Positions 38,431 through 41,523 of a stretch of 64,000 nucleotides of DNA are shown here, in pieces. Position numbers and translations under genes: made by a program. The first letter of the stretch is position 1, and each line of letters starts with the position of its first letter. Origin of the DNA: Pavona decussata (taxonomy: Eukaryota); assembly GCA_977016875.1 (NCBI GenBank), contig CDRNST010000289.1:930001-994000 (forward strand), read 5' to 3'. Below the pieces are notes generated by a model, which searched no databases, was not told the origin of the DNA, and saw nothing but the letters and a program-made list of their open reading frames with translations.

Positions 38431-39384
38431 TTATACTAAATCCTTCAACGGTACCCAAGAATTAAAATCGATCATCACTATATCCTTTCCATTTCACTAA
38501 AGCTCGTTTTTTCTTGTGGTCTTTCCGGATGACTTTGTCTATTCTAAATACCTCTTGTTTTGCTTTCAATAATTCAGCTTCATAAAAACTGCCTTGTATC
38601 TCTTCATTATTGAGATCCTTCAGTTTGTAAGTGATTGGATTGGTGTATTGGATTTTATCGATAATGAACACTTCTTCGGTCCAGTTTGGTGTATAACCTT
38701 TGTCAAATACATTTCTTTTATACTTTGATATCCTGACCTTGTCACCTACTTTAAACTTAGGTAATTTTGGTTGCCTCATATCACCATATAGGTTGAAGTA
38801 AACAGTTCCTTTGTTTTTCTTTTCTCTGGCTTCTGTTGGTGTCATTTTGATTGAACTGTGTTTAGACATATTATACTGTTTCAACAACATGGGTAATATA
38901 GCCAGATACATTGTATTGCCTTGGGCAGTGAACTGCCTCCACATGGTTTTGATTGTTCTATTCCATCTCTCCACCACTGATGATTTCTCTTCATTTTCTG
39001 TTGAATAGAGTTTTATGTTGTGTTTATTGAGTAAGTCTTTCATATGTTTGTTGTAGAACTCTGGGCCTTTGTCAGTCCATAGATACTCTGGTTTATTCCC
39101 TTCTTCAAAACTGTTTTGGAATGCTTTGGTTACAGTTTCACTTTTCTTATCTTTAAACGGAACAATCCAGCCGTATTACTGAAGATATCTATAACCATGA
39201 GAAGATACTTATAAGCTTTGTTCCATTTACTCAACTGTTGCATTTCAACAAGATCAGCAGCCCATATTTCATCAACATGATTAAGAATAACACGCCGTCG
39301 AGTAAAGTTACGCTTTATGGGTTTATGCAGCTCATTAGCTAATGTTTCTAGCCAGTTTTTACTCGACGGCTTTTGGCGTTTTTT
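38431..39384 (-). pseudogene. Retroviral-type (rve) integrase with C-terminal chromodomain; no ATG of its own
   Basis: ELHKP..RRRV..WAAD / WTDKGPEF / SVVERWN DDE triad; chromodomain LVKWKGY..NSWVP; indels at ~39176 and ~38470. Confidence 0.93.
39294..39384 (-). promoter_or_regulatory. Candidate -1 ribosomal frameshift signal (PLA2 protein to integrase)
   Basis: A_AAA_AAC at 39384-39378 in X_XXY_YYZ phase, 7-nt spacer, perfect 13-bp stem 39370-39358 / 39306-39294. Confidence 0.75.
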
Positions 39385-40172
39385 GAAGCTCCAAGTCCTA
39401 GTTTTCTCTTAAGATAGATTGAGCCTTGAGCAAAGCTTGTCCCCCAAGGTCTTTCACGATAGGGAATTGCAGATATTCTTTGAAGCACGAGATGATCAGC
39501 AGCATGTTTATCGGATAATGATTGAGCATTACTATAATCTATATCATGTTGTTGACAAATAGCATCTAGCTTATTTATCGGTTCTCGATACTTGGGGTCA
39601 TCTGATGCCAATCTTTCATCTAATTTTGTTCCAGGGCCACAATAATTATATTTTTTACCAGTAGGAGTTCTCAAATGAAGTTCACCGAGTTTTGCAAGTT
39701 GGTTTTGTATATCGAAACCACTCCCATCAAGATCCTTTCTGTCAGTGGCATATTTTTTTTTTGGCCTCACTTTAGTAGATAATTGATCAAGCATTTCAGA
39801 ACCTGTCTTCTTTATAAAAGGAGTAGCTTTTTCCAAAGCATAATCAAGAGCCTTCTTTTGTAACTTGGGATTTCTCAATGCTTCAGATCCATAATATCTA
39901 CCCATTTCTGCAGCCTTTTTTACCCAACCATGGGATATCATGTTGAATCAACATATCAGCACCAGTTGACGCTATTGTATCCATTATGCCCGCCCCTTTG
40001 GACGGGCTGTTCCGTTTCCCTGATTTTGTTTAACGAATTTGTTTTTTTTTTTTATCCCGCATTCTGCACAAGTACAAAAGAACATCAATCGATTATTTTT
40101 TGTTCGGACATAACCAGAAGGTTCAACACATTCAGTGTGTTTTTTCTGTTGAACACAATACAATTTTACCAT
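39348..40172 (-). pseudogene. Zn-ribbon + helical + parvovirus-like phospholipase A2 virion protein (two indels near 39990 and 39920)
   Basis: YCV..KK.T...CTCAECGIKK; YNYCGPGTKL...INKLDAICQQHDIDY (Ca-binding loop and HD dyad). The bridging frame reads KGAGIMDTIASTGADMLIQHDIPWLGKK. Confidence 0.85.
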
Positions 40173-40185
40173 GTATACATATATA

Positions 40186-40725
40186 TTAGGCAATATTTGT
40201 AAAATAATTTATTATGAATCGATGGTTCACACTTTGCTCATTAAAATCAAATTTTACATTATGAATTGTTTCTGAAATTGATTTCCCTTTTTGACGTTCG
40301 ATTAAATAATAGAGGCACCAATATCCACATAATACAGAATCTTGATCTTGAATTTCATCTGATGAATAGACTAATGTTTTGTCACCTGTAGCGAGATATT
40401 TTTCCACTTCTTTTGGCATGGGCAATCCAAAACTATCAAAATATTCAGCATATTTGTTTCCATTTCGATATGCAAGCCAATGTGTGCCTGATCCGATATA
40501 ATCATCAAGATTTATGATCCCCACTTCATTTTTTCTGATGGACATGGGTAATTTATCTTCGCTGAATACTCCTCTAAAATATTTGATACCAAGCTGTGTA
40601 GCCCAATTAATGAGATCAATATTGCTTAGCGGGGTATTAATAAATTTCACAATATGTCCACTACCTGAAGGCAGTGCAGATCTTACAAGATATCCCCAAT
40701 TAGTGGAATGCCTTTGAAAGGACTG
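40186..40725 (-). CDS. Adenain-like cysteine protease (no ATG; frame opens at the A-run near 40730)
   Basis: GIINLD..SGTHW, YFDSFG, IQ....LCGYWC catalytic H/D/Q/C. Confidence 0.92.
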   Translation of the reverse strand, partial: QSFQRHSTNWGYLVRSALPSGSGHIVKFINTPLSNIDLINWATQLGIKYFRGVFSEDKLPMSIRKNEVGIINLDDYIGSGTHWLAYRNGNKYAEYFDSFGLPMPKEVEKYLATGDKTLVYSSDEIQDQDSVLCGYWCLYYLIERQKGKSISETIHNVKFDFNEQSVNHRFIINYFTNIA

Positions 40726-40731
40726 TTTTTT
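40657..40731 (-). promoter_or_regulatory. Candidate -1 ribosomal frameshift signal (core protein to protease)
   Basis: A_AAA_AAC at 40731-40725 in phase with the N-S-P-F frame; crossing stems AAGGCA/TGCCTT and TCCACTA/TAGTGGA downstream. Confidence 0.6.
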
Positions 40732-41523
40732 TTCCTAGCAGTAACCCTTTTCCTTTTTTAGAGGTTTTTTTTTTACTCCCATGCCTATGGCTTGTTTCCA
40801 AGTACCATAAAATGGAGGCGGTCTATTATCAGCCGGAAGAACCAAACCACCATTGGTATTTTTTGAAATATAAACTGGTACAGACCGTCTTGATCTCTCT
40901 CTGTCCACTTGCAACCCTTTTCCAGTCAATGCATTCAACAATAAAGGAACACGAATTGAAGCCAACAATGTACCCAAGAAACCACCTGATTGACTCTTTG
41001 TTGGTTTAATAACAATCTGTCCCCCAGTATTAATTACATTGACTATCTGTTTCTTTTGTTCATTTGTCAACCAATCTTTGTACTTTATCAATTGATCAAC
41101 TTTGTTTTGTGGAATTAAGAACCCACCAACCTGTTTTCCCTTCCCGAATATCTTATCAACACCAAGACTGGCAAGACCGGATAATGCTCCTGTAGCCAGT
41201 GGACCAGCAGCCTTTGATGCAAGACTTGTTACAGCTGGAATTGCCCTAGCGCCAAGACTGAATAATGATGTCCATAGGCTTCATCCCATTTTGACTGCTT
41301 TTCGGATTTGTGTTTTTGATATTTTAATGTCAGAACCAGTACCATTTTTCATTGATTTTTGTAATCTATTTATTTGGGTTTTGGTTAACATAAGTTGGTC
41401 AGGTCCATTTAGTTCATCATGTGATAATCTGATTGTTTTTGCTGAATTATTTCTCAATGCCTTTGCTAATTTTTGTTTTTGTCCTTGAGACAATCTTACA
41501 CCATGTGAATGATAGTTTGTCAT
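40683..41523 (-). pseudogene. Polinton core/structural precursor protein with repeated GG/GxG sites
   Basis: One frame 41523-40735 with an internal TGA at 41281; QSGGFLGTLLASI, ALTGKG; C-terminus GKGLLLGK-NSPFKGIPLIGDIL recovered across two A-run indels. Confidence 0.75.

What the first reader, a model, noticed from the sequence alone, without database searches (positions are those of the whole stretch)
38431..41523. Twin structural-protein/enzyme cassettes: retroviral expression logic in a dsDNA polintovirus
Two adjacent gene pairs share one design: an ATG-initiated virion protein, then an ATG-less enzyme (protease, integrase) in the -1 frame behind the same heptamer, with a GxG motif at the junction (SGSG, LGLG). 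Inference: this fixes a low enzyme:structural ratio, packages both enzymes, and lets adenain release them at maturation. Recurrence makes chance less likely, although the DNA is A-rich.
Basis: inference. Interest (0 to 1): 0.88.

Follow-up and report, generated by a model that had tools for sequence, protein, structure and literature searches.

The report
Frameshift-coupled protease and integrase genes
A decayed copy of a virus-like DNA element (Polinton/adintovirus type) preserves a family-wide layout in which the protease and integrase genes have no start codon and lie one base out of frame behind virion-protein genes; this suggests retrovirus-style ribosomal frameshifting in a DNA-virus lineage, but it is unproven and this copy is dead.

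Summary
Partly confirmed. Bases 38431-41523 (minus strand) hold five genes of an Alpha-adintovirus-like Polinton: a ~280-aa virion-module protein, an adenain-like protease, a Zn-ribbon ORF, PLA2X, and an rve+chromodomain integrase.

The copy is degraded: 7 breaks in 3 of the 5 genes.

The PLA2X/integrase junction is as described. The integrase ORF has no ATG, lies in the -1 frame and overlaps PLA2X by 58 nt. An in-phase A_AAA_AAC sits in the overlap, followed after 7 nt by a predicted 13-bp stem (z = -3.7). LGLG lies just upstream.

The protease junction is not as described in this copy: the protease ORF is in the same frame as the upstream pieces, behind stop codons. SGSG lies in an insertion shared only with one near-identical relative.

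Protein relatives nevertheless show the design at both junctions. The upstream proteins end 13-14 residues after a K-N, and the enzyme frames read as the -1 frame of those ends. No conserved ATG precedes either enzyme, and I/VGMG or LGLG lies upstream. Sister lineages encode in-frame PLA2-integrase and protease-integrase fusions.

Best reading (0.55): programmed -1 frameshifting makes virion-protein-enzyme fusions. A 2024 preprint partly anticipated the idea. DNA of relatives was not fetched (barred).

The parts
40683..41523 (-). Gene for a ~280-aa virion-module protein of unknown fold. It is ATG-initiated and lies between the presumed capsid genes and the protease. Broken in this copy: 1 in-frame stop and 2 frame changes.
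   Evidence: frames; relatives are single proteins of about 280-295 aa, and 72/120 end with a G-x-x-S-P-F tail; no known family or fold.
40777..40788 (-). I-G-M-G codons in the virion protein. This is the conserved hydrophobic-G-hydrophobic-G motif upstream of the protease junction and a candidate processing site.
   Evidence: sequence. IGMG, VGMG or IGLG in 87/120 relatives.
40683..40734 (-). Overlap zone between the 3' end of the virion-protein gene and the start of the open protease frame. It holds an A run followed by C. In intact relatives this is the G-K-N / K-K-Q two-frame site.
   Evidence: for the relatives.
40186..40734 (-). Adenain/Ulp1-clan cysteine protease ORF. It has no ATG before the conserved domain and is unbroken (182 codons plus stop).
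   Evidence: Peptidase_C5, E = 0.018; 232 relatives with the H, D and C motifs invariant; a profile of relatives matches the ASFV pS273R protease, E = 7e-4.
39984..40172 (-). Small Zn-ribbon ORF (DUF5679-like), unbroken. Its stop overlaps the PLA2X start codon.
   Evidence: some relatives have it fused in frame to PLA2X.
39339..39984 (-). PLA2X gene: a parvovirus-type phospholipase A2 domain with a basic C-terminal tail, ATG-initiated. Broken in this copy: 1 frame change and 1 premature stop.
   Evidence: Phospholip_A2_4, E = 6e-10.. Named as in Starrett et al. 2021.
39390..39401 (-). L-G-L-G codons, 2 codons upstream of the heptamer. Candidate processing site.
   Evidence: LGLG in 83/120 PLA2X relatives; the same motif directly precedes the integrase in in-frame fusions.
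39378..39384 (-). A_AAA_AAC heptamer in phase with the PLA2X frame, inside the 58-nt PLA2X/integrase overlap.
39294..39370 (-). Predicted RNA stem-loop starting 7 nt after the heptamer. The 13-bp outer stem has arms at 39370-39358 and 39306-39294 and encloses a 7-bp hairpin.
   Evidence: -28.2 kcal/mol, z = -3.74, 0 of 200 shuffles as stable; rank 21 of 1353 windows in the module; the same stem appears in a 241-nt fold.
38431..39408 (-). Integrase ORF (rve catalytic core plus C-terminal chromodomain), in the -1 frame relative to PLA2X, with no start codon of its own. Broken in this copy: 2 frame changes.
   Evidence: Relatives.
41552..45215 (-). Context: upstream ORF pieces of the same module, presumed to be capsid genes. 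They are not identifiable with the tools used and are also interrupted.
   Evidence: no family or PDB match.
45328..45789 (+). Context: fragment of an A32/FtsK-type packaging ATPase of the element.
   Evidence: Pox_A32, E = 3.9e-12.

Best explanation
The interval is the enzyme-bearing half of the virion-gene module of a degraded Alpha-adintovirus-like Polinton (Maverick).

Shown from protein relatives: in the lineage it belongs to, the protease and integrase ORFs have no start codon of their own. Each overlaps, in the -1 frame, the last 13-14 codons of the preceding virion-protein gene. Each overlap begins at a Lys-Asn pair encoded AAA-AAC: G-K-N in the ~280-aa protein and S/P/T-K-N in PLA2X.

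Inferred: a fraction of ribosomes slip -1 on this heptamer and produce virion-protein-protease and PLA2X-integrase fusions. At the integrase site a stem-loop 7 nt downstream would assist the slip. The zero-frame products end in short basic or hydrophobic tails.

Inferred by analogy with retroviral Gag-Pro-Pol, not tested: this would keep the enzymes scarce relative to structural protein and carry them into the particle. A conserved hydrophobic-G-hydrophobic-G motif (IGMG, LGLG) a few to about 20 residues upstream of each site would let the protease cut the enzymes free.

In the window only the PLA2X/integrase junction still shows the design. With 7 breaks in 3 of 5 genes, this copy cannot make either fusion.
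For: 1. Element identity. Hits to PLA2 domain, rve, chromodomain, adenain-like protease and A32 ATPase. PLA2X is the hallmark of Alpha-class adintovirus virion modules.

2. Integrase junction in the window. In-phase A_AAA_AAC in a 58-nt overlap. A 13-bp stem follows after 7 nt, z = -3.74, in the top 1.6 % of windows. The overlap and the immediate start of integrase homology leave no room for a start codon or an intron.

3. PLA2X relatives. 57/120 clusters have x-K-N followed by a basic tail, 41 of them with 13-14 residues. Another 18 stop directly after K-N, so the K-N site is kept even where the tail is lost. The tail is present in clusters with 1439 and 333 members, i.e. families that amplified.

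4. Integrase relatives of the same lineage read K-K and then P-S-S upstream of the conserved start. That is the -1 reading of the PLA2X end and fixes A-AAA-AA in the DNA.

5. Virion-protein relatives. 72/120 have the tail, 66 of them G-K-N, and 71/72 have exactly 13 residues after N. G, S, P and F are invariant and K, N are >=90 % conserved in 62 full-length relatives.

6. Protease relatives. The upstream extension reads x-K-Q-S/P, the -1 reading of G-K-N-S, in 35/50 that reach the site. 29 of those imply AAA-AAC. 32/36 have no Met between that site and the domain. Called starts scatter over positions where other relatives have Leu, Val or Ile.

7. Natural in-frame fusions in related lineages. 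PLA2-rve-chromo proteins of 427-429 aa have their own N-terminal Met, and protease-integrase proteins also occur. 22 of 103 anchored representatives have hydrophobic-G-x-G directly before the integrase.

8. A 2024 preprint suggested -1 slippery sites in adintovirus Penton ORFs and possible Hexon-Adenain fusions from KnotInFrame.
Against: There is no expression or protein evidence of any kind.

All comparative evidence comes from ORF-caller proteins of mostly degraded genomic copies. Frames through the A-rich linkers differ between copies: 17/120 virion-protein relatives read another frame and 12/120 protease relatives are joined in frame to the upstream protein.

The length window of the searches hid long fusions.

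The DNA of relatives was not examined. Synonymous-site conservation and covariation of the stem are therefore untested, and two-frame coding alone would conserve much of the overlap.

At the protease site the first base of the heptamer varies: A in 13, C in 13 and G in 3 relatives, and 6 have CAA instead of AAA. No downstream structure is predicted in the window (z = -0.09).

The linkers are Lys-rich, so A-rich heptamers are likely by composition. Any canonical in-phase heptamer has about a 0.2 chance in the overlap.

Some lineages appear to have an integrase with its own Met 11 residues before the conserved E-L-H-K-P motif, and a few protease lineages have an M-E start 18 residues before the domain.

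LGLG and IGMG do not match the adenovirus protease consensus as I know it.
Confidence: 0.55

Rival explanations
1. The enzymes are expressed independently, by non-AUG or internal initiation, their own transcripts, or splicing to an upstream exon. The heptamers are a by-product of Lys-rich, A-rich linkers in tightly packed overlapping genes.
For: The linkers are A-rich, and in-phase canonical heptamers occur at 1.2 % of codons in the module. The first base of the protease heptamer varies, and no structure follows it in the window. Some related lineages seem to have their own Met for the integrase or protease. Vertebrate Mavericks are described with separate intronless int and pro ORFs.
Against: Most relatives of this lineage have no ATG between the overlap and either conserved domain. 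Integrase homology begins within about 10 codons of the heptamer, so an intron or a leader has no room. The K-N site is kept even where PLA2X stops right after it. A strong stem lies at canonical spacing. In-frame fusions in sister lineages show that a fused product is the normal form of the integrase there.
Confidence: 0.2
2. The same fusions are made, but by RNA-polymerase slippage on the A runs. A subset of transcripts gains or loses an A; the ribosome does not slip.
For: The junction linkers carry A runs, up to 8-12 in this copy. Genomic copies differ in frame exactly in these linkers, which shows the runs are slippage-prone at least at the DNA level.
Against: The conserved unit in relatives is short: six A followed by C. 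That is shorter than the runs on which eukaryotic polymerase slippage is usually noticeable (my own knowledge, not checked here). The stem at 7-nt spacing fits ribosomal rather than transcriptional slippage. The longer runs in this copy coincide with its damage.
Confidence: 0.12
3. There is no design. The frame offsets are decay or homopolymer assembly errors, and functional elements encode plain in-frame polyproteins or separate genes.
For: This copy has 7 breaks, and several frame changes coincide with homopolymer runs, where long-read assemblies also err. Some relatives are in frame across the junctions (P0001, P0316, P0405).
Against: Random indels would not give the same zero-frame stop 13-14 residues after K-N in 71/72 and 41/57 divergent clusters (46-93 % identity), including clusters with hundreds to over a thousand members. 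In this copy the integrase junction itself shows no sign of damage.
Confidence: 0.08

Closest known systems
Retroviral gag-pro-pol expression by -1 ribosomal frameshifting (several retroviruses use A_AAA_AAC at gag-pro; my own knowledge, not checked here)
   Same: A structural ORF with a start codon comes first. Start-less protease and integrase ORFs lie in successive -1 frames. The heptamer is of the same type and sits in a short overlap, and at one site a stem-loop lies at 7-nt spacing. The expected consequences are the same: a low enzyme:structural ratio and co-packaging.
   Different: This is a dsDNA element with no reverse transcriptase. The two cassettes are separate, each behind a different virion protein, and are not nested in one polyprotein. 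The protease belongs to the adenain/Ulp1 cysteine clan, not the aspartic class. Nothing has been shown experimentally.
Hypothesised -1 frameshift isoforms of adintovirus Penton and 'Hexon-Adenain' fusions (Buck-lab preprint, PMC11071296)
   Same: The virus group is the same, as is the proposed mechanism and the idea of a virion-protein-protease fusion.
   Different: The preprint rests on KnotInFrame predictions for some genomes and names Penton and Hexon as upstream partners. Here the partners are a ~280-aa non-capsid protein and PLA2X. An integrase cassette is added. The evidence here is conservation of both reading frames across hundreds of clusters.
In-frame PLA2-integrase and protease-integrase fusion proteins of related Polinton lineages (P0490, P0533, P0540; P0484, P0526, P0539)
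   Same: The domains and their order are the same. A hydrophobic-G-x-G motif lies directly before the integrase, and the integrase has no start of its own.
   Different: In those lineages a single ORF needs no recoding and gives one product only. The window's lineage has a stop 13-14 codons after the K-N site, with the enzyme in the -1 frame, which would give two products.
ASFV polyprotein processing by the pS273R protease (closest solved relative of the protease) and adenovirus precursor processing by adenain
   Same: A clan-CE cysteine protease is encoded next to virion precursor proteins that carry G-G or G-x-G motifs.
   Different: The match is weak (E = 7e-4; Pfam Peptidase_C5 below threshold). 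The specificity of the Polinton enzyme is unknown. LGLG and IGMG do not fit the adenovirus consensus.

Membership tests
Programmed -1 ribosomal frameshift site | Slippery heptamer X_XXY_YYZ in phase with the upstream ORF | tested here: met
   Integrase junction: A_AAA_AAC is in phase at 39384-39378. Protease junction: the phase is not readable in this copy. In relatives it is inferred from the two-frame reading G-K-N / K-K-Q, with a variable first base.
Programmed -1 ribosomal frameshift site | Downstream ORF in the -1 frame, open from the site, without its own initiation codon | tested here: met
   Window. Relatives. Most have no Met; a minority of lineages may have one.
Programmed -1 ribosomal frameshift site | Stimulatory RNA structure 5-9 nt downstream | tested here: inconclusive
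   Integrase site: a 13-bp stem after 7 nt, z = -3.74. Protease site: nothing beyond shuffles, z = -0.09. These are predictions only. Rfam has no match.
Programmed -1 ribosomal frameshift site | Conservation of heptamer and structure at synonymous sites, and covariation in relatives | not tested
   Only protein-level two-frame inference is available.
Programmed -1 ribosomal frameshift site | Trans-frame protein product observed | not testable with these tools
   No proteomic or ribosome-profiling data are at hand.
Polinton / Maverick / adintovirus (Alpha-class virion module) | rve integrase (with chromodomain in adintoviruses) | tested here: met
   (rve, chromo). Full-length relatives.
Polinton / Maverick / adintovirus (Alpha-class virion module) | Adenain-like cysteine protease | tested here: met
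   Pfam Peptidase_C5 is below threshold. A profile of relatives matches the ASFV pS273R protease. The H, D, Q and C motifs are invariant.
Polinton / Maverick / adintovirus (Alpha-class virion module) | FtsK/A32-type packaging ATPase | tested here: met
   Pox_A32, E = 3.9e-12, at 45328-45789; a fragment only.
Polinton / Maverick / adintovirus (Alpha-class virion module) | PLA2X gene | tested here: met
   Phospholip_A2_4, E = 6e-10, with a basic tail in relatives. Definition.
Polinton / Maverick / adintovirus (Alpha-class virion module) | Protein-primed family B DNA polymerase | tested here: inconclusive
   Ten plus-strand ORF pieces at 46.0-50.9 kb gave no Pfam hit. The gene may be too decayed or may lie elsewhere.
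Polinton / Maverick / adintovirus (Alpha-class virion module) | Double jelly-roll major capsid and penton proteins | tested here: inconclusive
   ORF pieces at 41552-45215 have no Pfam or PDB sequence match. No fold prediction was made for them.
Polinton / Maverick / adintovirus (Alpha-class virion module) | [quoted passage not shown] | tested here: not met
   No inverted-repeat pair brackets the element. The ends may be lost or interrupted, for example by the BEL/Pao element next door.
Adenovirus-protease (adenain) substrate site | Consensus with Met, Ile or Leu at P4 and Gly at P2 (my own knowledge of the adenovirus consensus) | tested here: not met
   LGLG and IGMG, read against that consensus, have Lys, His or Pro at P4. 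The motifs are conserved, but their cleavage is an assumption.

The most novel reading that the evidence does not exclude
A widespread lineage of animal Polintons/adintoviruses uses two conserved -1 ribosomal frameshift sites of the A_AAA_AAC type to make virion-protein-protease and PLA2X-integrase fusions. This is a Gag-Pro-Pol-like programme in a dsDNA virus. It evolved from, or toggles with, plain in-frame PLA2-integrase fusions seen in sister lineages. It would be the first conserved recoding system of this kind in a eukaryotic dsDNA virus group, and it would mean the integrase travels in the particle attached to the membrane-penetration protein.
Probability: 0.45. Interest if true: 0.8.

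Novelty: new variant of a known kind. Interest (0 to 1): 0.62.

Why it matters
If the design is real, it changes how Polinton and adintovirus genomes should be annotated. Start-less protease and integrase ORFs are currently truncated at arbitrary Leu or Val codons by gene callers, or scored as defects when copies are judged for intactness.

It would give these elements a retrovirus-like way of dosing and packaging their enzymes. It predicts that the integrase enters the cell bound to the PLA2 entry protein.

It would also add a eukaryotic dsDNA virus group to the short list of systems with conserved -1 recoding. The three states seen among relatives (own start, in-frame fusion, -1 overlap) offer a natural series for studying how recoding sites arise.

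For this locus itself the result is ordinary: it is a dead, interrupted copy.

Tried and rejected
- Stop-codon readthrough or a variant genetic code as the reason for the in-frame stops. Rejected: relatives have a sense residue or a continuous frame at the matching points.
- Splicing as the route to the integrase. Rejected by inference: homology starts within about 10 codons of the heptamer.
- A second copy in the window for comparison: none found.
- Known RNA families: none (the only match is a chance hit, E = 0.49).
- Identity of the ~280-aa protein. Pfam, PDB sequence search, AlphaFold2 (mean pLDDT 51; only residues 1-80 confident) and Foldseek against PDB and BFVD all gave nothing. Its structural role rests on gene position only.
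- Capsid genes and PolB: not recognisable.
- Terminal repeats: none.
- Host or source names of relatives: none on record, so the host species is unknown. Nothing suggests a human contig.
- Arg codon choice in the 3' arm of the stem: not unusual (CGN makes up 42 % of Arg codons), so it adds little.
- A third in-phase A_AAA_AAC in the Zn-ribbon ORF: the -1 frame closes at once in this copy and the nearest hairpin is about 33 nt away, so it is not treated as a site.
- Literature: no paper in the library describes frameshifting at Polinton protease or integrase genes. One preprint raises the idea for Penton and Hexon-Adenain.
- Left out on purpose: fetching DNA of related elements; any sequence joined across frames; any consensus. 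The N runs were left untouched.
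Full report
WHAT IS THERE

On the minus strand, 41523 to 38431 holds five genes in a row:
- A ~280-aa protein with an ATG. It has no known family or fold.
- An adenain/Ulp1-clan cysteine protease. Pfam Peptidase_C5 gives E = 0.018. A profile of 26 relatives matches the ASFV pS273R protease at E = 7e-4.
- A small Zn-ribbon ORF (DUF5679-like).
- A protein with a parvovirus-type phospholipase A2 domain (E = 6e-10). This is the 'PLA2X' that marks Alpha-class adintovirus virion modules (Starrett et al. 2021).
- An rve integrase with a C-terminal chromodomain.

Upstream on the same strand lie further interrupted ORFs. They are presumably capsid genes but could not be identified. 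An A32-type packaging ATPase fragment lies at 45328-45789 on the plus strand. A BEL/Pao LTR retrotransposon sits next door at 25984-32135.

No flanking inverted repeats and no recognisable PolB were found. The element is therefore a Polinton/adintovirus-like relic in what looks like an animal genome. The host could not be named, and nothing suggests a human contig.

STATE OF THIS COPY (counts only)

Compared piece by piece with close relatives:
- Virion-module protein gene: 1 in-frame stop and 2 frame changes.
- PLA2X: 1 frame change and 1 premature stop.
- Integrase: 2 frame changes, one inside the catalytic core.
- Protease and Zn-ribbon ORFs: unbroken.

This makes 7 breaks in 3 of the 5 genes. 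Several of the frame changes coincide with homopolymer runs, where long-read assemblies also err. The stops and at least one frame change do not. There is only one copy in the window.

THE OBSERVATION

- The integrase frame opens 58 nt before the PLA2X stop, in the -1 frame, and has no ATG before the core.
- A_AAA_AAC sits in phase at 39384-39378.
- L-G-L-G lies two codons upstream.
- In-phase A_AAA_AAC occurs twice in 2087 codons of the module. The chance of one in a 19-codon overlap is about 0.02; for any canonical heptamer it is about 0.2.
- Seven nt after the heptamer a 13-bp stem enclosing a 7-bp hairpin is predicted: -28.2 kcal/mol, z = -3.74, none of 200 shuffles as stable.
- The stem persists in a 241-nt fold. 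Its window ranks 21st of 1353 in the module, despite lower G+C than the other top windows.

The protease junction is not as described:
- In this copy the protease ORF shares its frame with the two upstream pieces and is separated from them by stops.
- The C-terminal part of the upstream protein has to be read in three frames.
- SGSG lies in an insertion found only here and in a 98 % identical relative.
- No structure beyond shuffles follows the A run (z = -0.09).

WHAT THE RELATIVES SHOW

Only proteins were used; DNA of relatives was not fetched.

Virion-module protein (1852 relatives, best 120 examined):
- Full-length members are single proteins of about 280-295 aa that cover both window pieces.
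- 72/120 end in a conserved tail beginning G-x-x-S-P-F. 66 of these read G-K-N, and 71/72 have exactly 13 residues after the N.
- In 62 full-length members G, S, P and F are invariant and K and N are at least 90 % conserved.

Protease relatives (232; best 120 examined):
- They have no conserved start. Called starts scatter over positions where other members have Leu, Val or Ile.
- Where the ORF extends upstream it reads x-K-Q-S/P in 35 of the 50 that reach the site.
- That reading is the -1 frame of G-K-N-S. Together the two readings fix AAA-AAC in the DNA.
- The preceding base is A in 13, C in 13 and G in 3. Six relatives have CAA in place of AAA.
- 32 of 36 have no Met between this site and the domain.

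PLA2X (703 relatives, best 120):
- 57 end with S/P/T-K-N plus a basic tail, 13-14 residues in 41 of them.
- 18 stop directly after K-N.
- Clusters with 1439 and 333 members carry the tail.
- LGLG is present in 83/120, mostly 2-7 residues before K-N.

Integrase representatives of this lineage read K-K and then P-S-S before the conserved W...E-L-H-K-P start. That is the -1 reading of the PLA2X end and fixes A-AAA-AA.

SISTER LINEAGES

Among 103 anchored integrase representatives, 22 have a hydrophobic-G-x-G motif in frame directly before the integrase. Full-length single ORFs exist with PLA2, rve and chromodomain in one frame and a Met at the N-terminus (P0490, P0533, P0540; 427-429 aa). Protease-integrase fusions also exist (P0484, P0526, P0539).

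So in much of the wider family the integrase is normally the C-terminal part of a larger virion-associated protein. Other lineages may have their own Met 11 residues before E-L-H-K-P (8 representatives), and vertebrate Mavericks are described with separate int and pro ORFs. There are three states: own start, in-frame fusion, and -1 overlap. The window belongs to the third.

INTERPRETATION

The best-supported reading is programmed -1 frameshifting at both junctions in the functional ancestors of this copy. It would give a majority zero-frame product with a short tail and a minority fusion carrying the enzyme.

The evidence is good for the integrase cassette: canonical in-phase heptamer, spacing, stem, no room for another route, and in-frame homologues. 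It is moderate for the protease cassette: both frames are conserved and the ORF lacks a start, but the first base varies and no structure is seen.

Dosing, packaging and release at IGMG or LGLG are inferences by analogy. The motifs are conserved, but they do not fit the adenovirus protease consensus as I know it.

Rivals are independent expression (0.2), polymerase slippage on the A runs (0.12) and mere decay or assembly error (0.08). The last is hard to reconcile with the same stop position in dozens of divergent clusters, some of them high-copy.

CAVEATS

- The relatives are ORF-caller products from mostly degraded copies.
- Frames through the A-rich linkers vary between copies.
- The length limits of two searches hide long fusions.
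- Two-frame coding by itself conserves sequence.

PRIOR WORK

No paper in the library describes frameshifting at Polinton protease or integrase genes. A 2024 preprint notes KnotInFrame-predicted slippery sites near the 3' end of some adintovirus Penton ORFs and possible Hexon-Adenain fusions, and it proposes hidden isoforms from non-standard translation (PMC11071296). The general idea is therefore anticipated. What is new here: the twin arrangement, the integrase cassette behind PLA2X, the family-wide two-frame conservation, and the link to in-frame fusions.

RULES AND SLIPS

- Consensus lines printed by the alignment tool were not used.

Noticed in passing
window 25984-32135 (-): BEL/Pao LTR retrotransposon with three long ORFs of 735, 773 and 488 aa. 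Pfam hits: DUF1759 gag-like; RVT_1 plus Peptidase_A17; Integrase_H2C2 plus rve plus DUF5641. G+C is 0.48 against about 0.36 around it, and it looks much less decayed than the Polinton next to it.
   Followed up: partly
window 33799-38406 (+): Low-G+C block (0.30) of ATG-initiated ORFs that converge on the virion module. It includes an HNH_3 endonuclease (37661-38146, E = 4.9e-16), a weak Endonuclease VII-like hit, and two adjoining ORFs of 412 and 255 aa without a family. These may be accessory genes of the element.
   Followed up: partly
window 40041-40047 and 39982-39986 (-): A third in-phase A_AAA_AAC lies in the Zn-ribbon ORF at the end of a 12-A run, with a G+C-rich hairpin about 33 nt downstream. 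The Zn-ribbon stop and the PLA2X start overlap (TAATG). Some relatives have Zn-ribbon and PLA2X in one frame, and in others the PLA2X frame extends upstream in the -1 frame.
   Followed up: partly
relatives P0484, P0526, P0539; P0490, P0533, P0540: Natural single-ORF protease-integrase and PLA2-integrase fusion proteins occur in related lineages. P0526 (649 aa) adds an N-terminal C2H2 zinc finger region.
   Followed up: partly
window 59884-60495 and 62317-63027 (-); repeats 50521-50756 / 63518-63727: Another mobile element: ORFs with an rva_4-type integrase core (E = 1.6e-70) and HTH domains. Inverted repeats about 12.8 kb apart lie in the same region.
   Followed up: no
window 51155-51552 and 32766-33007: Two near-perfect palindromes: 197-nt arms 4 nt apart, and 109-nt arms 24 nt apart. 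The second lies between the BEL/Pao element and the low-G+C block.
   Followed up: no
window 46016-50917 (+): A chain of plus-strand ORF pieces in changing frames downstream of the ATPase fragment, without any Pfam hit. This may be a heavily decayed polymerase gene.
   Followed up: partly
window 4915-5050, 6541-6762, 24872-25004: Three runs of N (136, 222 and 133 bases), left as they are.
   Followed up: no
relative P0121 (model m6573840fa1fc): Only the first 80 or so residues of the virion-module protein fold with confidence, as four strand-helix repeats (pLDDT 80-90). The rest is predicted disordered or membrane-like, with several G-G motifs that could be protease sites.
   Followed up: partly
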